Origin: Vitrella brassicaformis CCMP3155
Lineage: Eukaryota > Protista > Chromerida
Direction of reading: 5' to 3'
NCBI GenBank assembly: GCA_001179505.1
Contig: CDMY01000891.1
Location: forward strand, 1 to 12,775
Length of the DNA: 12,775 nt
A program made the translations under genes and the position numbers. Each line of letters opens with the position of its first letter. Positions within the stretch are counted from its first letter, which is position 1. Under the pieces are notes generated by a model. It had not been told where the DNA came from and ran no database searches. It saw only the letters and a program-made list of their open reading frames with translations. Shown here in pieces: positions 199 to 12,775 of the stretch.

Positions 199-1277
199 GG
201 CGATATCTATTCATCCTGGTTGGTACTGGACGTACCGATGGGGCGGATGCGCTCAGCATTCAAAAAATCACATGTAATGCACTCAGACGGCCTGCCGCAG
301 CGGGATTAGTCTCGCGGAATACGGCAACGATACGAGCAAACGGAATGCGACAACGACACGAGGAAGCAAACTGCGGAAACAATCAAGGTCGCTTTCCGTT
401 ACCTTAAAGCCTATCAAGCAAAATACACAGTCAATCAAGAGGAAAGACAAAGGCAGAAAACGCCTAAGAGAAAATGTCAGAGCGATAGCCAAACGGATGG
501 GCGGAGGGATGGACGTGACCTCAGTGAGTCCTTCCCTTCCTCATCTTTCCTTCCCCTCCTCCCCTTCCTCTCTTTTCCCTCGCAGCGGTTTCAGGGAGCA
601 CCCTAGGTGGCCTGACGGCCAAGTCCCCTGTCGGTCTGTCCAACATGAAACAGGCACCCTAACATGCAACCCGGACACGCAACACGCAGCACGCAGAGGG
701 CAGATGCAGCAGAGAGGAGGATATGCAATGCGCTGCGAACGACGGCCACATACAAGCAGGCACACAGCGTCGCACACACGCCACCCCAGCAGCAGCTTGA
801 AGGCGGCGTGCGTGCGTGCGTCAGGCACCATGACTCCATACGTAGATACCGCCCATCCCCAGGTGGCCAGCCAGTGCAGATCGCCCAGTCACACACAAAC
901 ACGCTCTCTTTTCCCTCGTCTGCGAGCTTTTCGATGTACGTACAGAAAAGTCAATAAAGGACCCCGTTTCAAAAGATCTGAGACAGGCAGCACACGAGCA
1001 GGCAATCCGGACCGACAGAATCTGAAAGTGACGGCGAAAAACCGACGCGAGCGACCCTGGCCGAAGCGACCCAGCCGTCGGTCCTTTGAGGCGACTTTTT
1101 GACGTTTCAAGGTTCGCAATGGCGCAGCCCCAGCCCGAAGGTATCAATGCGCAGATGGGTCGACGGTAACCATGGAAAAGCCGAACGTTGTATGTGTTGC
1201 AGCCAAGGCATCCATCTGTGGACACAAGCGAGTCCGCCACGACCTCTCAGCAGCAGCAGCCGTCGGGTCCCCTCGCC

Positions 1278-2549
1278 ATGGCAACAGCGGCTGCCGTCGG
1301 CGCCACGGGCAATGGCAATGGCAACGGCGGATACAGTAAGCCTGACATCAGCCGGCGGATGGATGGATGGATGAATGTCCTCTCTTCTGCGTGTTGTCGT
1401 TGCTGCAGTGTCTGTTGATGAGGGTCGTGTGTACGGGCAGCGGGAGTGGAAGCTCATCATCCCGTGGCTCAAGGGTGCTGGACACACACACGGCACACCC
1501 ATCATCCACAACGAGCCGTGTTTGCAATGGTCCCTGGCTGTGTATGGTCTGTGTGCAGTTGGGGACAAGGTGAGTGTGCTCAACGCCAATCCGCTGTACG
1601 TGGAGGCCAAGTGCGTCGAGGGCGAGAGTGCGGTCTGCACGGCGGGGGGTGAGGGGGACACACAGACGGACTGGATGGGGGGCGCCGCATCAGTGCGTGT
1701 GCGTGGGAGACATGGGGTATGGCGACGTACGAGGGTGCTCTGTGCGTGGGTGTGTGCGTTTTCAGGTGTTGCTGAGGCCGGCGCTGCCCCGAAGGCGAAA
1801 GTAGGCAGCACCACAGCACTACACCGCACCCCTCCATGGCCATGCACACCACACACCACACACCACCACACCATACGGAGGGAGATCCAGACGATGACCG
1901 TCCTATGCTCCACCCTCCCCTTTTGTGTCATTATCGTGTGTGGTGCATTCAGGCCAAGGGGAAGGGCGAGGCCAAGTCTGGTGGTGGCAAGGCGCGTGCT
2001 GCCCCGAAGCACCCTTCGTTTGAGGAGATGATCAAGGAGGCCATCGGCACACTCAAGGACCAGTCAGGCAGCAGCCTGTTCGCCATCAAGAAGTTCATCC
2101 AGGCCAAGTACTCCCTCGACGTCGAGGACGCACGCACCAAGCACCACCTCAGCCGCTCACTCTATAAGATGACCGAAGCCAAGAAACTCATCATGGTACA
2201 GGGGGAGGGTAGGTGATAATGGTGTGGCGTGTGTTGGTGTGTTGTGTGCAGATCAAGGCGTCGTACAAGTTGGACATGAACGTGGTTGGCGCTGCCAATC
2301 TTGAAGGCCGCACCCAAGAAACCCATGGCCGCCGCTGAGGGTACGCACGCACGCCACACAAACCACACACCACACCACACCACACCACACACGCAGACAC
2401 GGACGCCGCGCGACCATCACCAGGGGACGGTTGTACACGTGTGTCTACCCTTTGCCAGGTCCGCGTGTGGGGCGCTTCGCCCACTGCCAGTGGGCAATAG
2501 CACGGCCGACAAGGATGAGAAGGGCGGCGAGGGGGAGGGGGACAAGTGA
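1278..2549 (+). CDS. Linker histone H1/H5 globular (H15, winged-helix) domain protein, spliced
   Basis: Phase-consistent GT-AG exons: 1278-1335, 1409-1474, 1559-1648, 1766-1800, 1953-2195, 2252-2340 (frame problem near 2282) and 2491-2549. The spliced core KHPSFEEMIKEAIGTLKDQSGSSLFAIKKFIQAKYSLDVEDARTKHHLSRSLYKMTEAKKLIM|IKASYKL matches the GH1 consensus (HP..Y..MI.EAI..LK.R.GSS..AIKKYI...KL..VK.S(F/Y)KL). Both ends are uncertain: there is an upstream ATG at 1119, and a perfect donor GTGAGT at 2546 may extend the 3' end. Confidence 0.8.
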
Positions 2550-2669: not shown

Positions 2670-3555
2670 TGTGTGTCCATTGCATCCATCAGTGCGATGT
2701 TTGTGCAGTCTGACGACATGAAAGACCGATCTCCATCGTATGCATCTGTGGATGTGTGGATGTGTTTGCTTCTTGTCTGCTCGACCGCCCTGCCTGCCCA
2801 TCGATTCGCCGTGCCTGGGCGTCGCCTCTCCGTTCTCGACCCACCCAGAGCGACGCCTCCTGCCTGCCTGCCTGGCTGACTGCCTTCCATTTTCTGGCTG
2901 GCTAAGTCGTCCGTGTGTGTGGTTTGGGATGTGCGTGTGTGTGTTGACTTTTTGCCGACACTTTGGCATGGAGCGACTGGATGAATGGAATGAGAATTGA
3001 TTGACGCGCAGCAAGTCACACCAACGAACAGATACCACAACAGACAGACAGACATACACCCACCCACCCACCCTGTCTACTCAGCTAGATCAAGGTCATG
3101 CAGATAACCAGTGCCACCACCCGCTGCCTTGCCTGCCTGAACAAAGGCACCCCGGAACACGCAATCACTACGTGCGTACAAATAGAGACTTAAACCAGCA
3201 CCCCCTCGTGGCACTATACGTACCCTCCCACCTGAAGTCAGCCCCCCTCCCTCCCCCTCTGTGAGGATGGATGTGTACGACCACCAGCCGACCCCTATGC
3301 GGCCACCACCTTCTGGCGAACGAGCGCAGCCGTCTGAGGGTACCGCTCATCTGGGCCGCGCTTGCAAGCAAGAGGCGGCTCGGTGGTGGAGATCTTCATG
3401 CCCGAGTTGACTCGGACAATAAACTCATCTCCCGCCTTGTCCCCACATGGAAGAGCCACTCAGTCGTAAAGCTGTCTCTCTCCCTCCCCCTGTTCGCTAC
3501 ACACCCTCCTGTCCCCTCCCGCCCTCTCGCACATCTACGCTGGCAGGCAGGGACG

Positions 3556-4012
3556 TCATGTGATGGGCTGATCGGCCCACTGCCGCACCTCATCGCGCGA
3601 CCCGGCGAACACCACCTTGGTCTTGCACTGCTCGCACAGATACTCCGGCTCGTCCAGCAGCTCCACCAGTGGTATCTTCTTCTTGCGGCCCTCGTTCTGT
3701 CTCTTGATGCCATCATTCTCCTCACGCCGCCGCGCATTCTCCGCGCGCACCTGCTGGAGGTCCCGCCGCCACTTGCTGCAGCGGTCGTCATAGCACTGGC
3801 GACACAGCCGCAGGTGTCTGCAGGGCATGTACATGACCGACGGGGGCGCGTCGAGGCAGATGGCACACTCATGCCCATCTCCCTCTGGCTGGGCCGCTGC
3901 CGGGGGCTGCTGCTGCTGGGGAGGCTGCTGTAGCGGGAGAGGGGCACTCGAGCTGCTGGACGAAGACGGCTGGTGCTGCGGGTGGTGCTGCTGGATGCTC
4001 ATCTGGGCAAGC
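3556..4012 (-). CDS. Terminal exon encoding a C3HC4 RING finger (IAP/MDM2-like zf-C3HC4_3 pattern) preceded by a Gln/Pro/Ser-rich tract
   Basis: The ligands read C-x2-C-x11-C-x-H-x3-C-x2-C, then a 52-aa insert, then C-x2-C (CEQCKTKV). Acceptor cacacAG at 4014-4013; stop at 3556. Confidence 0.88.
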
Positions 4013-7000
4013 CTGTGTGTGTGCATCAATCGCATCGCATCATGCGCCGTGTGTGTGTAATGGGATGTGTGTGGGCCCGCGTACCCTCGCTCGGTCTCTG
4101 CGAGCCGCCGGGCCAGCTCATCATTCTTCCGCTGCAGCTCAGCCTCCCGTGACGACACTCCCACACTGCACACACACACACAAGGACACGGCAAGGCATC
4201 CGAATCGGATCCGTCCCATCCGTACGTCAACGCCCGTGGGTGTATGGCACCCACCTATCACCACCACCACCAGCAGCCGAGGCGCCCTGGTCGCCCTCAT
4301 GATCATGCGATGGCCTGACCACACACACATAAAGCCGATGAAGTGACGAGCCGCCCATCGCCAGTGTGTGGGTGTGCCTGCCTACCCTAGTGGCTCTTCG
4401 TATGGTGCTGATGGTGTTGCGAATGCGGCGGCGGCTACTGGAGCTGCTGGTGCAGCAGTGGGATGGTCGTAGCTACTGGAGGACGGACAGGCGTCAAATG
4501 CGGACCTGACACAATGCAGAACAGACATATGGCAGTTCGTTGGAGGCTGTCCTGCGTTGGTCGACAGCTCTTGTGGGCATACCTCGGCCCTTAGGATGGC
4601 GAGGGACCAAGTGACCTGAGAAAATCCATGCGCAACAGCAACCCACCAGTGTGCTTGTGAGGTGGCCTCATGTCGGCCTGTCAGTGCCTTACTTGGGATA
4701 GTTGACGAGTGGCGGAGGGCCCCGGTGACACGACGGACGATGCCCACTCGACGAGGAGGGAAACGAGCCGTCACTGACACAAAGAGAGACGACAACACAC
4801 ACCAACACCATTCATTGTGCCCAACCATCGATCCCCTTCTCTGTGTCTGTCTGCCTACAGCTGCTGTGGCTCATGTGCTAGAGGTGGGAATGGATCATCG
4901 GCACCGCTCGCCGGTCTGTGTGCAGGTGGGAGAGGCCGAGGGGGTGGGGGCGGGTGAGAGGGACTCGACGACACAAACGATCGCCGCTTGCCCGACTCGC
5001 ACAGCTCCTCAGCCGACGGCAGACAGGGAGGGTGAGGGACCGGCCGAGGCAGCAAGGATGGTGCAGCAGCCGAGAGGCCCAGCCGCCTGCCTCTGCCCAA
5101 CTTGCTGCCTGCCGATGGGCCCGGCAGGCGCTCCTCGCGCGGCGTCTGGTCGGCCGTCGACACACAGCTGGGGTGAGAGAGCAGCAGACGGTCAGCTAAG
5201 GGCTGCTCAGTCGCTTTGTGCTTGGGTGTGGGGGGCTGGAAGGGCGAGGAGGGGGAACGAGTCGACGTCTGTCGGCTTGGTTCACCCACGTGAAGAGGCG
5301 ATGTAGGTGGGCTGGTTGATTGTAGGTGATCGCCTTGGCGAGGTTGTGCATGTCGTCATCGGTGAGTATCGGGGGGTAGACGTCGCTCAGCAGGCCGTAC
5401 ATGTCGCACTCGAGCAGCAGCTGGTCCATCTTGTCACTCGTGGTCGTCGGCTGGGCCACTGGGGTGCCCTCAGGCAGGATGCGGCGGCGACGCGCGTAGT
5501 CGACGATCCTATGAATGCAACGCAAGACGGCAGCGAGGGAGGTGTGCGGCAGTACATGGCTGGTCTGTGCTGTTCGGTTGGAGTGTGTCTTACTCGCTGA
5601 AGTGGTCGGCAGAAACACACACAACTGGAGCACTGTACCTGCAGGCCCACGACAACCCACACACACAATCCAATCCATCCATCCATCTTTGTTGTGTATG
5701 CAAAAACGGCTGTGCACTTACGAGTCGAATCGGTTTCGCAGACTGCTGGTGGTCTCCTGAAGAGTCGACTGAGTGGTGCTAATGACCACATCGGGCCGCC
5801 CGTCGCCCGTCGACACTCGGATGGAGCGAACGGACTCATCGCCACTCAGCGGCCGCAGGAAGGGAGCGACCGCCTTAGACACACAACACCATAGAGAGAA
5901 GCAGTCAGTCCATCGACCCACCGATCTTTTTCCTTTGCCCTTCCTTCCCCTCCTCCCCTCTCACCTTGATTTCGCGGATCATTTGTGCGTATCGGGCCTT
6001 CTTCGCCGCCCGCTCACTCTCCAGCTCAGCTAACCTCGCAGCGAAGGTCTGAGCGATCCTTTGCATGACGCTCATGAGGCCCTTGAGCTGCTCCGGCAGC
6101 TGCACGGCCTCCAGCTGGGGAGGTGCCGGCTCGCCGTAAAATGCTGCCGCCGTGTGATGTGAGGGTGGGTCGACGTCTGTGTGGCCGTCAGCCGCCTCGC
6201 CGTCTGCTGCTGCAGGGGGTGAGAGCCAGAAGCGAATCCAGTCGCACACACCACCTGCTCACTCACACACAACACCACAGGAGCAGTGGATCCACCAAGG
6301 TACTGCAGTGAGTGGATGTGGTGGCTGGCCTCGGCTCACCTGTAAAGAGTCCGGCTTGTGCCTTGCTCTTCAACAGATCCACTCCCTCCTCCCCCTCCAC
6401 CCAACGCATCTCGCTAAGCATCCTCTCGAAGGCCCGCGGGTCCGCATCAATGAAGAATCGGTTGTCGTCGTCCGTCGGTAAGCGGTGGTCCCACCTGCCT
6501 CCGAATAGCGATGCCATCACCGAGCCCGCCGCACGGGTGAGGTGCTTGCGACGGACAGTGAACGGCCGGCCGCCCACGTTGAGGTCCAGCTGGTCGTCGC
6601 CAGAGGCGGCCGAGCCGTCAGATGCACCATAAAGACTCAGCAGCTCGTGGACGTCGTACGATGCGTCGATGCGCTTCTGCTCGGCCTCGAGCTCCTCCAG
6701 CGGGCCCACAATCTGTCTGTCCAATGCGCACAGGGCTCCGTGGCGCGAGAGGAGGTTGCGATCAATGGCACTCGGCAGGTCCATCGCCCTCAGCAGTGAG
6801 GCGTCGGAGGCTGACAGGCAGGGAGAAAGAGCCACGCAGATGAGATGAATCGATAGACTCCTCCTGCAGCTTCTTACCTGTCCGGACCACCCGCCAATCG
6901 GAGTGATGATGTGTCTGCCGGCAGCTGGTGAGGCCGCCATGGTGAGCCGCTGTCAGCAACTCATAAATTGGCGGTTGAGGAATGCCGCCAATGGGCGGTT

Positions 7001-7016
7001 GCTGAAGCCCAGACAT
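3556..7016 (-). CDS. BTB(KCTD-type) - coiled coil - degenerate BTB - TLDc stub - low-complexity spacer - coiled coil - RING protein, predicted as one spliced gene (~807 aa)
   Basis: Exons 7016-6878, 6810-6340, 6254-5965, 5873-5722, 5638-5594, 5508-5290, 5167-4859, 4773-4693, 4505-4386, 4314-4255, 4165-4085 and 4012-3556 sum to 2424 nt, with GT-AG ends and matching phases at every junction. BTB: DQLDLNVGGRPFTVRRKHLTRAAGSVMASLFGGRWDHRLPTDDDNRFFIDADPRAFERML. RING: CAICLDAPPSVMYMPCRHLRLCRQC...CEQC. The start could be at 7016, 6940 or 6785. The BTB and RING halves could instead be separate genes. Confidence 0.65.
6340..6810 (-). CDS. Exon encoding a KCTD/potassium-channel-tetramerisation-type BTB domain (BTB_2)
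   Basis: LNVGG..F.V....L......MA.LF.G.W......D...RFFID.DP..F..ML is the KCTD BTB signature. A predicted helix (LEELEAEQKRIDASY) precedes it. Confidence 0.9.
6891..7000. promoter_or_regulatory. Cluster of CCGCCAAT/ATTGGCGG motifs near the head-to-head gene junction (candidate bidirectional promoter elements)
   Basis: Exact octamer at 6891-6898, 6967-6974 (inverted) and 6985-6992, plus a variant ATGGGCGG at 6991-6998. Function is inferred from position only. Confidence 0.35.
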
Positions 7017-7046
7017 CTCACCCAGACATCTCACCCAGACATCTCT
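7008..7046. repeat. 13-bp tandem repeat x3 (CCCAGACATCTCA)
   Basis: Units at 7008-7020, 7021-7033 and 7034-7046; the last base of unit 3 differs. Confidence 0.95.
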
Positions 7047-7118
7047 GCTGAGCTGGGAAGTCAACCAAAACTGGCGATCGGCAACAAGCTCGCTTTTCTG
7101 CTTGACGCTGAGGGCGAG

Positions 7119-8525
7119 ATGAGCCGTGTGAGGCAGATGCGAAAAGTAGTCGGCAATTCTCCCTCATCCACACGGCAGCCCTTCACCAGCAGACCCTCAT
7201 CGCTGTCGACTCTTCCACCCAGGCCGACCGTCAGTGCTGGGAGAGTATGACGCCTGAGGAGGCCTTCCAGCTGGGCAAGCGGCTACCCAACCTGACAGCG
7301 CTCAGGATGGTGCAGCCACGCAGCGACCGGTTGTGGGGTCTGGACAGCATGATATGCGTCGTAGAGGGCCATGCGGCTGGGCGGCGGGAGGCGTGCGAGA
7401 AGGAGGGGCAGCAGCACATCGCGAAGGGATCTCTGGAGACCATCCACTTCACCCCCACCAGCAGCACCNNNNNNNNNNNNNNNNNNNNNNNNNNNNNNNN
7501 NNNNNNNNNNNNNNNNNNNNNNNNNNNNNNNNNNNNNNNNNNNNNNNNNNNNNNNNNNNNNNNNNNNNNNNNNNNNNNNNNNNNNNNNNNNNNNNNNNNN
7601 NNNNNNNNNNNNNNNNNNNNNNNNNNNNNNNNNNNNNNNNNNNNNNNNNNNNNNNNNNNNNNNNNNNNNNNNNNNNNNNNNNNNNNNNNNNNNNNNNNNN
7701 NNNNNNNNNNNNNNNNNNNNNNNNNNNNNNNNNNNNNNNNNNNNNNNNNNNNNNNNNNNNNNNNNNNNCCCAGCCAGACGGCGATCGACATTGTGAAGAC
7801 ACTCTCATTCGACAAGGCGAAGGAGGTGTATGTCTCCAGCGCCTACGGCTTCGTCCTCCCTCCGCCTGGCACCCCCTCACCCATACCCGCAATCATCAAC
7901 GACATGCAGCCTTTCCCAGTGGCCGAGGAGCTGCACATCCGCAGCGCATTTGGCGGGGCTCTAGGCCGTCTGCTGGGGCAGAAGATGCCCAAGATGCCCA
8001 TGGGGTGCAAGTTGTGTGGTTTGGTGCAGCTGTCAGTGCAGAGGATAGAATTGCCGTGTTGGAGGCGCTGGGGGAGGAGAGGGAGGTGGACAGTGTCGCT
8101 GTGGGTGATAAGGAGGAGCCGGTCAGTCTCACGCAGGGCGGCGCCTTTGATGGATGGCGGTCGCAGGGCTTACCGTCGCTTCGCAGCGTAGACATGTACC
8201 TATTAGGTATGCGAAGCAGGCAGTGAGTGCAGCAAAGGGGGCGCTCGGTCCGTCTCGTGTGTTCATCCGCCCTGTCTGTGTGTGTCTTTATTCAGTGCCC
8301 CATGACTTGGAGGATGCTGTTGCTGCCGAGCTCATCCGTGACGGCCTCTCGACTATCCTCACCGCTGGGCTGCGCGGCCTGAGGCGTGTGGAGCTGTGGC
8401 TGGAAGGGGAAGCGGATGACTCCATCCTCACGGCGATTCGACAGCTGCTCCCAAACGGCACGGAGATCGACGACTTCACCATCAACACAGTGGGAACTCT
8501 GGTGGAGGCATCTCGTCGCTATTAA
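7119..8525 (+). pseudogene. LRR-like solenoid protein of a probably lineage-expanded family; frameshifted and possibly 5'-truncated; spans an assembly gap
   Basis: Exons 7119-7145 (or 7127), 7223-8206 and 8296-8525. Recurrent LxxLxL-like units: LPNLTALRMV, SLETIHF, AKEVYV, AEELHI, VQVVWF, LPSLRSVDMYL, LRGLRRVELWL. The protein-like frame switches at about 7994-8001. N gap at 7469-7768. Confidence 0.6.
7469..7768. other. Assembly gap (300 N)
   Basis: Run of exactly 300 N inside the LRR-like gene. Confidence 1.
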
Positions 8526-9445
8526 TCGGTGAGAACGACACGGGGGGCGGCCGAGGACTCACTCTGTGTGCACACCGCACACGTGTGTGTATGTGTGTGT
8601 GGCCAGGCTGTCTGTCTGTTTGTCCACACACAAGACAAGACAGGACAAGACAAGACAAGACATGACAGCACCGTAGTCATAGCTGCCGCATGGCCGGCCA
8701 TCTGATTAGGTCCACGTGCAGACACTCTCTTCATGGATGGATGGATGAGTGGCCCGCCCAGCTGCGGTGTGTGCGCACGTGGGCACTGTACACTTGATCC
8801 TCGCGCTCCATTGGCAGCCCAGCGCCTCGGTTGATGCCTGGTCATTCATGCTGCCTCGGCCATTGCACCAGGCAGGCCGAGAAGGTGTCGCCTGCATGTG
8901 AGCGTGTGTGGATGGATGGTTGTTACCAGTGAGGCATGATAGCCCATGGATGGATGGATGGATGGCTGGGTTCATATTGTGTGCGGGACTCGTCTGATTG
9001 TGTGAATATCTTCAATTCTGTTGCCACACACATGGTAGGTTAGTGGGTCGAGTCATTGGCTGCCGGCATACATGCACGGAATTAAGTCGATAAACGAACA
9101 TGTCGGCACGTCATCGCCTCCGCATTTCTCGGCCCGCCATGATTACCTACACAATCCATTCACCCTCACACACGTGCAGAAGCTGCCGGCAAATCTAGAC
9201 TCGCCACGGGCTGGCGTGACACGTGGGACAAATAGAGATCGTATACACATAGACACACAGCGAAAAACGAAAAAGACAGCTGTCACGTCGAGGGCGAGGT
9301 CATCATCAAGGAGGCGACGGCACTCAGCCAATGCCACCCTGCAGACGGCTGAGCACACAGAGAGAGGGAGAGGAGAGAGGGACGCATAACTCATCCGTTT
9401 CTGTCTCTGTTGCTCCTTCTCTTCCTCACCTGCAGTGTGTAGATC
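8450..9445. repeat. Copy 1 (996 nt) of a near-identical direct duplication
   Basis: Starts cccaaacggcacggag and ends gtgtgtagatc at the edge of the N gap. It aligns to 9746-10712 with a few SNPs, microsatellite length changes and one 41-versus-15 nt replacement. Confidence 0.97.
8631..8666. repeat. (CAAGA)n pentanucleotide microsatellite
   Basis: caagacaagacaggacaagacaagacaagacatgac; the duplicate near 9927 is one unit shorter. Confidence 0.85.
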
Positions 9446-9745
9446 NNNNNNNNNNNNNNNNNNNNNNNNNNNNNNNNNNNNNNNNNNNNNNNNNNNNNNN
9501 NNNNNNNNNNNNNNNNNNNNNNNNNNNNNNNNNNNNNNNNNNNNNNNNNNNNNNNNNNNNNNNNNNNNNNNNNNNNNNNNNNNNNNNNNNNNNNNNNNNN
9601 NNNNNNNNNNNNNNNNNNNNNNNNNNNNNNNNNNNNNNNNNNNNNNNNNNNNNNNNNNNNNNNNNNNNNNNNNNNNNNNNNNNNNNNNNNNNNNNNNNNN
9701 NNNNNNNNNNNNNNNNNNNNNNNNNNNNNNNNNNNNNNNNNNNNN
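9446..9745. other. Assembly gap (300 N)
   Basis: Run of exactly 300 N between the duplicated segments. It is the same length as the first gap, so probably a placeholder size. Confidence 1.
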
Positions 9746-10712
9746 CCCAAACGGCACGGAGATCGACGACTTCACCATCAACACAGTGGGAACTCTGGTG
9801 GAGGCATCTCGTCGCTATTAATCGGTGAGAACGACACGGGGGGCGGTCGAGGACTCACTCTGTGTGCACACCGCACACGTGTGTGTATGTGTGTGTGGCC
9901 AGGCTGTCTGTCTGTTTGTCCACACACAAGACAAGACAGGACAAGACAAGACATGACAGCACCGTAGTCATAGCTGCCGCATGGCCGGCCATCTGATTAG
10001 GTCCACGTGCAGACACTCTCTTGATGGATGGATGGATGAGTGGCCCGCCCAGCTGCGGTGTGTGCACGTGGGCACTGTACAGTTGATCCTCGCGCTCCAT
10101 TGGCAGCCCAGCGCCTCGGTTGATGCCTGGTCATTCATGCTCACTCATCCATGCCGGCATGTGAGCGTGTGTGGATGGTTGTTACCAGTGAGGCATGATA
10201 GCCCATGGATGGATGGATGGATGGATGGATGGCTGGGTTCATATTGTGTGCGGGACTCGTCTGATTGTGTGAATATCTTCAATTCTGTTGCCACACACAT
10301 GGTAGGTTAGTGGGTCGAGTCATTGGCTGCCGGCATACATGCACGGAATTAAGTCGATAAACGAACATGTCGGCACGTCATCGCCTCCGCATTTCTCGGC
10401 CCGCCATGATTACCTACACAATCCATTCACCCTCACACACGTGCAGAAGCTGCCGGCAAATCTAGACTCGCCACGGGCTGGCGTGACACGTGGGACAAAT
10501 AGAGATCGTATACACATAGACACACAGCGAAAAACGAAAAAGACAGCTGTCACGTCGAGGGCGAGGTCATCATCAAGGAGGCGACGGCACTCAGCCAATG
10601 CCACCCTGCAGACGGCTGAGCACACAGAGAGAGGGAGAGGAGAGAGGGACGCATAACTCATCCGTTTCTGTCTCTGTTGCTCCTTCTCTTCCTCACCTGC
10701 AGTGTGTAGATC
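9746..10712. repeat. Copy 2 (967 nt) of the direct duplication
   Basis: Begins at the first base after the N gap. It carries the last 76 nt of the LRR-like CDS (to 9821) and the last exon of the TLDc gene. Confidence 0.97.
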
Positions 10713-12775
10713 TCCATATCAGCAGCTGTGAAGTTGGAGCTGGAGGCCAGGCTGGCGCGGCCCTTGTTGGTGATGGTCCCGATGTACTTCTTGTCGGGCG
10801 GGAGGCAGTCCTTCAGCAGCCACTGAGCGCAGCGGCGAAGGTCGGCACTCTCCCGTTGGCTGAAGCCCAAGAGTGAGCTGAAGCCCAGCCACAGGCGGCC
10901 GGGCGCCTTGTGGATCATGTCACCGATGCACACCTTGCCGCTCGGGTCACACACCACGTTCTTGACCACCCCTTGTGTGCCAGCGACCCAAACAGGCTGC
11001 TCGTCGGTAGGCAGGTCGATCTTGGTGATGCCGTCGCCCTCGAACGCGCCACGTACCGAGAAGAGCGACACGGGGTAGCGGGTCACGGTCACTGCAGTGG
11101 GGTCTGCGGGCGGGGTGAGCCCGCCCTCGATGTGGGCGGCGATGACGGGGCCGCCGAGGTCCTTGAGGAGCAGCAGGAGGTCGGGAGCGTCGCCCACATT
11201 CTTGAACATGGCCTCCTGCTCCCAGCCGTCACACTCAGCCCTGACACATAGACAGGAAAGCAGCAAAGGATATCATCCTCGAGGCACCAACAGCCTGCCT
11301 GTCGTCGGTTGCTCACTTGTAGAGTAGTTGTGGGGTCGCATCCGTCATGCCGGTCGCGTCGACGAGTGCTCGCAGGTCACTGTCAGACAGGATGGGGTCG
11401 GCCGGCACAGCACTCCACACCTGCACAGAGAGAGGAGGAAGATCTCATGATGTCCACAGCCACTTCTGTGCCCTCTGGTTGATGCCTGGCTGACTGACCT
11501 GGAAGACCTCCACTCGCTGAGCGGTGAAGGAGTAGGTCTCAGCACCACAGAGGCTCGCATCCTCGCTGCTGATGGTCTTGCCCACAAATTTCCTGTTGGC
11601 CGGCAGCTCCTTCTTCTCCACCCACTGATAGCACTTGAGAAGGTCGTCAGTCGGGCAATGCTCGCCCCGCCCCAGCCACAGACGGCCGTCAGCGATGGCC
11701 AGATTGCCCCGTGGCTCACCGGCCTCCTCCGTCACCGCCCCCTGTGTGCCTGCCACCACCACAAACTGCTCTCCCCTGGGCACCTCGATCTTGGTGACGC
11801 CCTCCTCGAACGCACCGCACACTGAGAAGAGCGACACGGGGCAGTCGAAGTGCAGCTCAGATGTGGGGTCGGCCGGCAGGTGCAGCTTGGTGTCGGCGAA
11901 GACTGCGATGGTGTTGGTGTCGTCGCACTTGATGACGAAGAGGAGGCCGCGGCGCCCCACCACCCGCTGCACCAGACTGGCATACAACGAACCGTGCAGC
12001 GAACTCCTGACACACACACACACACACAGCCAGACGTGCCGACGAATGCATGAAGCATGGCGCGATGGCGCGATGGCGCCTATTTGTTCTTCCTCACTTG
12101 AAGAGGCAGAGTCTGTTGGGCTGTTTCTTGCCGATCATGATGAGGAGGGTCTGCATGACGTCGTTGGCGAGGATGTTGGGGTACATGGCCTCGAGGACGC
12201 CGTACATCTCACTCACACGCACCAGCTCATCCTGGTGGGCACACGTGGGCGGCGGGACGACGGCGCCTTCGGAGGCCAGGCGACACCGACGAGCGAAATC
12301 AACGATCCTGAACAAACCAACAGACGATAGGTCCGCTGTCTTGCTGCCTTTGGTGGTTGTCTGGGTACTCACAAGTCGAAGTGGTGCCCAGACACATCGA
12401 CGATGGGAACATCACCATACCTGCACACGCGACACAGGGGAGAAGGAGAGCCAATGACACACATTCCCTCTGTCATCTCCTCCTTGCCTTTCTCACTTGG
12501 TGAATCGGTCGTTGAGTGTGTCGAAATCGGCCAGTGTGGCGTCGGTGGTCGCCACTGTGCGGCCATCGACAGTCACACTGAGCACCTCCGCCCCTCCCCT
12601 GCCGCCCTTTATGGACGACTTGATGAAGACGCCCATCATGTCCATGAAGCTGCGGAATGCCGATTGGCTCTCGCTGTCCTCAGTCGGTTTGTCGATGGCG
12701 GTGGGCGACTCCGCGAAGAAAATGTCGTGGTAGAAGGGGATGGGCTGCACGGCGTCGAAGATCTCGGTCTCGTCG
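10550..12775 (-). CDS. Degenerate-BTB plus tandem TLDc-TLDc protein; 5' end lies beyond the right edge
   Basis: Exons >12775-12497, 12420-12373, 12307-12098, 12006-11499, 11420-11317, 11240-10697 and 10615-10550 are all GT-AG and phase-consistent. TLDc starts: PNILANDVMQTLL...LCLFK|SSLHG and DPILSDSDLRALV...LLYK|AECDG (compare LLYRASRDG). TLDc ends: SFTAQRVEVFQ and NFTAADMEIYTLQ (compare F.V.E.EV(F/W)). Confidence 0.8.

What the first reader, a model, noticed from the sequence alone, without database searches (positions are those of the whole stretch)
3556..12775. Paralog pair with a swapped C-terminal module: BTB-TLDc-TLDc versus BTB-BTB-RING, switching at a shared phase-2 intron
Seen: both minus-strand genes have homologous consecutive exons (RNRFDS|YSAPVVCVSADHFSE|IVDYARR...MYGL...PPIL...RLFT| versus NDRFTK|YGDVPIVDVSGHHFDL|IVDFARR...MYGV...PNIL...CLFK|) with three phase-2 introns at identical positions. 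After the third intron (donors at 12097 and 5289), one gene enters a full TLDc domain and the other enters an unrelated Pro/Ser-rich region leading to a RING. Known: many BTB proteins are Cullin-3 adaptors, RING fingers recruit E2s, and TLDc proteins (OXR1, NCOA7, yeast Oxr1/Rtc5) bind the V-ATPase. Inference: this is a plug-in family in which a BTB oligomerisation scaffold swaps effector modules by exon shuffling. The BTB-BTB-RING form could be a self-contained or hetero-oligomeric E3 ligase acting with its TLDc sibling.
Basis: partly seen in the sequence, partly recalled or inferred. Interest (0 to 1): 0.8.

Follow-up and report, generated by a model that had tools for sequence, protein, structure and literature searches.

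The report
Chimeric BTB-RING fusion gene in Vitrella
One of the two genes is a fusion made when the front of a BTB-TLDc gene was joined, inside an intron, to the back of an unrelated ankyrin-RING gene; this is a clear but fairly ordinary case of gene birth by shuffling, and nobody has yet shown that the fused protein is made.

Summary
The window is a whole 12,775-bp scaffold of Vitrella brassicaformis CCMP3155. Both genes are already annotated: gene A is P0035 and gene B is P0014, the latter with BTB_2 and a RING. This scan has met the BTB-TLDc family before on other DNA.

The two genes share a ~114-aa module (41% identity, E 7e-17) with three phase-2 introns at matching places. An AlphaFold model shows this module has a KCTD/T1-type BTB fold.

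Two corrections apply:
- The TLDc domain starts about 25 residues before the third intron, so the switch cuts TLDc and gene B keeps a stub.
- Gene A is not gene B's counterpart. Gene B's front (6917-5267) is ~78% identical in DNA, introns included, to BTB-coil-BTB-TLDc paralogs. Its back (5254-3446) is ~79% identical to the 3' part of ankyrin-RING genes, starting inside one of their exons.

The join (5266-5255) lies in the intron. The annotated frame needs a weak cryptic acceptor and the skipping of a dead 33-nt exon that carries a stop.

On gene B's branch the BTB half and the RING are under purifying selection (omega 0.25 and 0.28). Neither gap touches a coding exon.

The parts
10550..12774 (-). 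Gene A (P0035, 585 aa, 5' end off the scaffold). Exons: 12774-12497, 12420-12373, 12307-12098, 12006-11499, 11420-11317, 11240-10697, 10615-10550.
   Evidence: My spliced model equals database record P0035. All introns are GT-AG.
12184..12585 (-). Gene A shared module with a T1/KCTD-type BTB fold (P0035 residues ~64-150), split by two phase-2 introns.
   Evidence: AlphaFold model pLDDT 91.3. Foldseek hits to KCTD16, KCTD9 and KCTD1 BTB domains, probability 1.0, TM about 0.6 by target.
11499..12174 (-). Gene A first TLDc domain. It starts in the shared exon and is split by the third phase-2 intron (12097-12007).
   Evidence: Pfam TLD 36.1 bits, residues 154-222 matched to profile positions 7-77. 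The top 15 Foldseek PDB hits are all TLDc structures.
10697..11420 (-). Gene A second TLDc repeat, with a phase-2 intron (11316-11241) at the same place inside the domain.
   Evidence: The main exons of the two repeats are 42% identical, E 5e-30. Intron phases.
3556..7016 (-). Gene B (P0014, 807 aa). Exons: 7016-6878, 6810-6340, 6254-5965, 5873-5722, 5638-5594, 5508-5290, 5167-4859, 4773-4693, 4505-4386, 4314-4255, 4165-4085, 4012-3556. The true start is probably the ATG of the MDLPS sequence near 6786.
   Evidence: Exon chain mapped from P0014. P0002 starts at MDLPS.
5267..6917 (-). Block derived from the BTB-coil-BTB-TLDc subfamily: promoter-proximal DNA, six exons, five introns and the first 23 nt of the sixth intron.
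   Evidence: blastn at 78% identity to L001 (P0015 locus) and L002 (P0002 locus), running through the introns. A 16-nt identity with L002's intron lies at 5282-5267.
6404..6586 (-). Gene B first BTB domain (Pfam BTB_2).
   Evidence: 28.6-29.9 bits against a cutoff of 21.4.
5388..5831 (-). Gene B second BTB-fold module (P0014 residues 315-406), homologous to gene A's module.
   Evidence: 41% identity to gene A. The fold is inferred from gene A's model.
5290..5387 (-). TLDc stub: first helix and first strand of the lost TLDc domain (P0014 residues 407-439).
   Evidence: Family alignment. TLD profile coordinates in the paralogs.
5168..5289 (-). Chimeric intron: 23 nt of BTB-TLDc intron, 12 nt of unassigned filler (5266-5255, the join), then 87 nt that are exonic in ankyrin-RING genes.
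   Evidence: Three-way comparison. Donor score at the 53rd percentile and acceptor at the 7th percentile of 59 annotated introns.
3446..5254 (-). Block derived from the ankyrin-RING family: the last ~395 nt of its large exon, the small exons and introns, the RING exon and ~110 nt past the stop.
   Evidence: blastn at 78.7% identity to L003 (P0016) and 78.6% to L004 (P0019). Protein identity 72% over all of P0014 residues 440-807.
4583..4615 (-). Dead exon relic: homolog of the 66-nt exon encoding P0016 residues 779-800, shortened and carrying an in-frame TAA. Its splice sites are kept, and the annotated model skips it.
   Evidence: acceptor 31st percentile, donor 68th percentile.
3610..3876 (-). 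IAP-type RING (C3HC4_3) with a 52-residue charged insertion before the last Cys pair.
   Evidence: Pfam matches profile positions 2-33 of 49 only. Closest solved RINGs are cIAP1/2 and XIAP. The insertion was counted from the sequence.
8450..10712 (.). Redundant ~1-kb overlap (8450-9445 against 9746-10712, 94.9% identity) on both sides of gap 9446-9745.

Best explanation
Gene B is a real chimeric gene.

Shown: a DNA-level rearrangement joined the 5' 1.65 kb of a BTB-coiled coil-BTB-TLDc gene (with its introns and upstream DNA) to the 3' 1.8 kb of an ankyrin-RING gene. The join (5266-5255) lies 24-35 nt inside the intron that splits the TLDc domain. On the donor side it lies inside a large coding exon.

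Inferred: splicing runs from the retained donor (5289) to a pre-existing AG inside the former exon (5168). That happens to restore the RING gene's frame. The protein would then read: BTB(T1) - coiled coil - BTB fold - 33-aa TLDc stub - about 190 aa of disordered Pro/Ser-rich linker - coiled coil - IAP-type RING.

Inferred from family knowledge: KCTD-type BTB domains self-assemble and RINGs recruit E2 enzymes. Such a protein would act as a self-oligomerising RING ubiquitin ligase, and it might co-assemble with BTB-TLDc paralogs.

Gene A is an ordinary BTB-BTB-TLDc-TLDc family member, not gene B's parent.

The confidence of 0.55 is for the whole statement, including translation as one protein. 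The DNA-level chimeric origin alone I rate at about 0.9.
For: - Front-half homology runs through the introns and stops in the intron.
- Back-half homology starts at 5254 inside what is an exon in P0016 and P0019, and runs past the stop codon.
- No TLDc relic lies downstream of 5289.
- The public gene model P0014 has exactly this exon chain. The genome paper says the models came from Augustus with RNA-seq intron hints (PMC4501334).
- On gene B's own branch, omega is 0.25 for the BTB half (22 synonymous, 17 non-synonymous changes; Fisher p 1e-5) and 0.28 for the coiled coil plus RING (15 and 14; p 4e-4).
- In the back half, exons are 89.5% identical to P0016's and introns 77.7%. Against L003, exonic indels are multiples of three except one 4+1 pair in low-complexity sequence; intronic indels are not.
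- There is no in-frame ATG between the join and residue 660, so a separate RING protein would lack the coiled coil.
Against:
- The in-frame acceptor is weak (7th percentile).
- The 187-nt intron 4692-4506 is the longest of 59 and hides an exon relic with decent splice sites and a TAA. If that relic is included, the RING is lost.
- The Pro/Ser-rich exons evolve neutrally (omega 0.99).
- The branch-specific constraint may partly predate the fusion.
Confidence: 0.55

Rival explanations
1. The fusion is real in the DNA, but the full-length protein is not the product. The locus makes a truncated BTB-BTB protein, either through intron retention with a stop at 5196 or through a premature stop in the relic exon. 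The RING part would then be an untranslated, slowly decaying remnant.
For: Weak cryptic acceptor, and a competing acceptor at 5236 that is out of frame. Dead exon with a TAA and intact splice sites. Linker omega about 1. No RNA evidence.
Against: RING omega is 0.28 on gene B's branch. The 1.07 kb of back-half exons carry no clear frame-breaking indel, while 651 nt of introns and UTR carry several indels that are not multiples of three. All eight RING zinc ligands are intact.
Confidence: 0.3
2. Assembly artefact: two different loci (a BTB-TLDc copy and an ankyrin-RING copy) were wrongly joined in a short-read contig.
For: The scaffold is small, with two gaps and an unmerged 1-kb overlap. Both parents belong to multi-copy families.
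Against: The join lies in gap-free sequence. The two homology tracts do not overlap and are separated by 12 nt of unassigned sequence, so there is no shared repeat long enough to mislead an assembler. Both halves differ by about 20% from every other copy found.
Confidence: 0.07
3. One reading: a systematic plug-in family in which the BTB scaffold regularly exchanges effector modules at a dedicated phase-2 intron placed at a module boundary.
For: Phase-2 introns are conserved across the family and most downstream exons are phase 2-2 symmetric.
Against: The intron lies inside the TLDc domain. None of the 26 proteins returned by the family profile search has a RING, and gene B is the only RING-bearing relative met. 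The donor-side breakpoint is in an exon, not an intron.
Confidence: 0.08

Closest known systems
KCTD / T1-type BTB proteins (Pfam BTB_2), several of which are Cullin-3 adaptors
   Same: Gene B's first BTB passes the Pfam BTB_2 cutoff. The shared second module has the KCTD16/KCTD9/KCTD1 BTB fold in a confident model.
   Different: There are two BTB units in tandem separated by a coiled coil. The second is not recognisable by sequence. Cullin-3 binding and oligomeric state are untested. No KCTD C-terminal domain is present.
TLDc proteins (OXR1, NCOA7, mEAK7/TLDC1, TBC1D24), which bind the V-ATPase
   Same: Gene A has two TLDc domains by Pfam and by fold. A BTB_2+TLD architecture also exists as an ESM Atlas cluster of 93 proteins, mostly from diatoms.
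   Different: Gene B has only a 33-residue stub of TLDc. V-ATPase binding by the Vitrella proteins is untested.
Ankyrin-repeat RING E3 ligases (plant XB3/XBAT type) and IAP-type C3HC4_3 RINGs
   Same: The donor family has ankyrin repeats followed by a C-terminal C3HC4_3 RING. There is a weak match to Pfam RING_XB3-XBAT31. The closest solved RINGs are cIAP and XIAP.
   Different: A 52-residue charged insertion lies between the third and fourth ligand pairs. A long Pro/Ser-rich linker and a coiled coil precede the RING. Gene B has lost the ankyrin head.
Chimeric genes made by exon shuffling, such as TRIM5-CypA (TRIMCyp) or Drosophila jingwei (from my own knowledge)
   Same: A new C-terminal module is captured downstream of a retained donor site and replaces the original C-terminal domain.
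   Different: The captured piece here keeps its introns, so this was a DNA-level rearrangement and not retroposition. It begins mid-exon and depends on a cryptic acceptor.

Membership tests
BTB_2 / T1-KCTD BTB | Sequence match to Pfam PF02214 above the gathering score | tested here: met
   Gene B first BTB: 28.6-29.9 bits against a cutoff of 21.4.
BTB_2 / T1-KCTD BTB | The shared second module is recognisable as BTB by sequence | tested here: not met
   No Pfam hit. A profile search of PDB sequences gave 0 hits. hhalign against the family's first BTB gave probability 0.3%.
BTB_2 / T1-KCTD BTB | The shared second module has the BTB fold | tested here: met
   Model of P0035 residues 55-352, pLDDT 91.3. 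Foldseek: KCTD16 T1 TM 0.61, KCTD9 0.56, KCTD1, probability 0.99-1.0. This was tested on gene A; gene B is inferred from 41% identity.
BTB_2 / T1-KCTD BTB | Oligomerisation and/or Cullin-3 binding | not testable with these tools
   Needs biochemistry or complex modelling.
TLDc | Pfam PF07534 above the gathering score | tested here: met
   Gene A (P0035): 36.1 bits against 24.5. Single exons alone fall below the cutoff. Gene B: no hit.
TLDc | TLDc fold | tested here: met
   The top 15 Foldseek PDB hits are all TLDc structures, E 7e-8 to 2e-5, TM by target up to 0.72.
TLDc | V-ATPase binding | not testable with these tools
   Known for OXR1, NCOA7, mEAK7 and yeast Oxr1/Rtc5. The PDB entries listed are such complexes.
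RING E3 (zf-C3HC4_3) | Pfam match above the cutoff and all eight zinc ligands present | tested here: met
   30.9-35 bits against 27, covering profile positions 2-33 of 49. The last Cys-x-x-Cys follows a 52-residue insertion (sequence).
RING E3 (zf-C3HC4_3) | E2 binding and ubiquitin-ligase activity | not testable with these tools
   Needs an in vitro ubiquitination assay.
Chimeric (fusion) gene | Each part has a separate parent family, with DNA homology ending at one breakpoint | tested here: met
Chimeric (fusion) gene | A single transcript and protein spans the join | not tested
Exon patterns gave 0 hits.

The most novel reading that the evidence does not exclude
The BTB-BTB-RING chimera is expressed and co-assembles, through the shared BTB scaffold, with the roughly 30 BTB-TLDc paralogs. 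It would then ubiquitinate them or whatever their variable TLDc domains bind. A family of putative recognition proteins would thereby gain a built-in, Cullin-independent ligase subunit.
Probability: 0.1. Interest if true: 0.6.

Novelty: new member of a known kind. Interest (0 to 1): 0.35.

Why it matters
Both parent families and the breakpoint of a young fusion gene are identified here to within about 12 nucleotides, in a free-living relative of apicomplexan parasites. The case shows how an accidental join inside an intron, a cryptic splice site and symmetric phase-2 exons can together yield a new open reading frame. If the protein is made, it joins a self-assembling BTB scaffold directly to a RING, a combination I did not find in any other protein in my searches. 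The case also shows that a shared intron is not necessarily a domain boundary. For the wider scan, it adds to signs that Vitrella reshuffles ubiquitin-system modules unusually often.

Tried and rejected
- A single-sequence AlphaFold run on gene A's exon 4 failed (pLDDT 32). It was replaced by a 28-sequence alignment run.
- I first modelled a mini-exon at 4615-4583, but it contains a stop. It later turned out to be a dead exon relic.
- My first-intron model for gene B (6877-6811 with the ATG at 6940) breaks the frame. The annotated start at 7016 uses another frame, and the real start is probably the ATG of MDLPS.
- I looked for a decayed TLDc relic downstream of 5289 by tblastn and found none.
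- Sequence-only tests of the second module as BTB gave nothing.
- Low GC3 in the linker exons looked like evidence against coding. I rejected this because the parent genes show the same low GC3 in the same exons.
- Literature searches on BTB+TLDc and on Vitrella gene families found nothing relevant.
- Two exon-pattern scans of the JGI contigs found nothing.
- I did not send my own joined translations to any search tool. Exons were searched by reference. Full-length searches used the database's own records P0014 and P0035. Joined sequences were compared only inside local scripts.
Full report
**What the window is.** The sequence is GC-rich with short GT-AG introns. Protein searches show it is a complete 12,775-bp scaffold of Vitrella brassicaformis CCMP3155 (assembly GCA_001179505.1). 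The database holds two proteins whose only contig has exactly this length, and every relative found is from this species. Earlier notes of this scan had already named the organism and the BTB-TLDc family on other DNA. I confirmed both independently.

**Gaps.** There are two runs of N, at 7469-7768 and 9446-9745. Neither touches a coding exon. Gene A's coding sequence ends at 10550, and gene B's annotated start is at 7016. Gap 2 is flanked by a direct repeat, 8450-9445 against 9746-10712, at 94.9% identity, and each copy abuts the gap. This is the signature of two overlapping contig ends that were not merged. The second copy of gene A's 3' end is therefore probably not real. Gap 1 lies in an unidentified plus-strand gene. 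Because genes A and B sit on different contigs of the scaffold, their spacing rests on scaffolding.

**Gene models.** I rebuilt both genes from the sequence. Gene A has seven exons and its 5' end runs off the scaffold. It equals database record P0035 (585 aa). Gene B equals P0014 (807 aa), which UniProt names 'RING-type domain-containing protein' with BTB_2 and zf-C3HC4_3. According to the genome paper, that annotation came from Augustus with RNA-seq intron hints (PMC4501334). Whether this particular gene had such hints is unknown.
For full-length searches I used the database's own records. My own joined translations were used only in local scripts.

**The observation.**
- The two genes share about 114 residues at 41% identity, E 7e-17. 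The largest shared exon alone gives E 1e-15.
- The three introns lie after homologous residues and are all phase 2.
- This is what descent from a common ancestor predicts, not chance.

**What the domains are.**
- Gene B's first exon block carries a significant Pfam BTB_2 match.
- The shared module is not recognisable as BTB by sequence.
- I modelled gene A residues 55-352 with a 28-sequence family alignment. The model is confident (pLDDT 91.3, pTM 0.86).
- In a Foldseek search of the PDB the top 15 hits are all TLDc structures: mEAK7, NCOA7, OXR2, TBC1D24 and Oxr1. After them come KCTD-type BTB domains at TM about 0.6 by target.
- So the shared module has a T1/KCTD BTB fold, and gene A's repeats are true TLDc domains. 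Pfam TLD also passes its cutoff on the full protein (36.1 bits).
- By homology with P0028 and P0001, gene A's missing N-terminus holds a further BTB.

**First correction.** The Pfam match on gene A covers residues 154-222, which correspond to profile positions 7-77. The third intron is at residue 179. In the model, the first TLDc helix and strand precede the intron. The same phase-2 intron recurs inside the second TLDc repeat. The switch point is therefore inside the TLDc domain, and gene B keeps a 33-residue stub of it.

**Second correction: the real parents.** A profile of the shared exon found only 11 proteins in 1.8 billion.

| Part of gene B | Closest relatives | Evidence |
|---|---|---|
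| Front (residues 1-445) | P0002 (74% identical), P0015 (64%) and the close P0003; all continue after the same residue into TLDc | |
| Front DNA, 6917-5288 | P0015 and P0002 loci, 78% identical, straight through five introns | |
| Intron start, 5282-5267 | 16-nt identity with P0002's intron | |
| Back (residues 440-807) | C-terminus of P0016 (ankyrin repeats + RING), 72% identical over its whole length; about a dozen similar proteins | |
| Back DNA, 5254-3486 and 5246-3446 | P0016 locus (78.7%) and P0019 locus (78.6%), introns included, running past the stop | |

In those parent genes the start of the homology lies inside a large exon. The join is thus at 5266-5255, where 12 nt have no assigned origin. 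No TLDc relic lies downstream.
The annotated acceptor at 5168 is an AG that already exists as coding sequence in P0019's exon. It happens to fit the phase-2 donor.

**Is the fusion protein made?**

Evidence for:
- On gene B's own branch (three-taxon parsimony), omega is 0.25 for the BTB half (p 1e-5) and 0.28 for the coiled coil plus RING (p 4e-4).
- Back-half exons are better conserved than introns (89.5% against 77.7%).
- Against the P0016 locus, exonic indels are multiples of three apart from one 4+1 pair in low-complexity sequence. Intronic indels are not.
- There is no in-frame ATG between the join and residue 660.

Evidence against:
- The in-frame acceptor scores at the 7th percentile of 59 annotated introns.
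- An out-of-frame acceptor lies at 5236.
- The 187-nt intron 4692-4506 contains the relic of a 66-nt exon present in P0016. In gene B the relic is 33 nt long, carries an in-frame TAA and keeps decent splice sites.
- The Pro/Ser-rich linker evolves neutrally. Its low GC3 is shared by the parent genes and so says nothing either way.
Two gene B-specific exon patterns found nothing in the JGI contigs.

**Artefact?** The join lies in gap-free sequence. The two homology tracts do not overlap, so there is no shared repeat that could mislead an assembler. Both halves are about 20% diverged from every other copy found. I rate misassembly at about 7%.

**Verdict.**
- The exon-shuffling idea is right in kind, but the details differ. 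This is a one-off fusion between two Vitrella-specific families, it cuts the TLDc domain, and gene A is not the counterpart.
- The 26 proteins returned by the family profile search are all from Vitrella and none carries a RING.
- A BTB_2+TLD architecture also exists in diatoms, according to an ESM Atlas cluster.
- I rate the finding as a new example of a known process, of moderate interest.

Noticed in passing
window 1836-2216 (+): An exon encoding a linker histone H1/H5 globular domain (Pfam Linker_histone, 70.5 bits). It belongs to a plus-strand gene downstream of gene B.
   Followed up: partly
window 7247-8525 (+): Plus-strand open frames of an unidentified gene, interrupted by gap 7469-7768, with no Pfam match. 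Its 3' end converges on gene A's 3' end.
   Followed up: partly
window 3610-3876 (-) and P0016, P0022: The RING of this ankyrin-RING family carries a conserved 52-residue charged insertion between the third and fourth zinc-ligand pairs. P0025 in the same search has a canonical RING (55 bits over the full profile).
   Followed up: partly
L004 about 9560-9700: The DNA of the P0019 locus encodes the first half of the RING, but the annotated protein P0019 lacks it. A 1-nt indel relative to gene B suggests a frameshift, a pseudogene or an annotation error.
   Followed up: no
window 582-651 and L002 5622-5692: A 71-nt stretch is 88.7% identical between this scaffold and the region upstream of P0002. 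It may be a small dispersed repeat.
   Followed up: no
59 introns of the window and L001-L004: Annotated acceptor sites are preceded by G/T-rich tracts ending in TGTGTGCAG rather than by a classical polypyrimidine tract. Intron lengths range from 52 to 187 nt with a median of 81.
   Followed up: partly
window about 10195-10240, 8950-8970, 2650-2670, 1350-1370: GGAT/CCAT tetranucleotide microsatellites recur in intergenic and intronic DNA.
   Followed up: no
P0002 residues 513-1015 and P0015 residues 585-936: Gene B's closest paralogs carry a long, mutually conserved C-terminal region after a shortened TLDc domain. It has no Pfam match.
   Followed up: no
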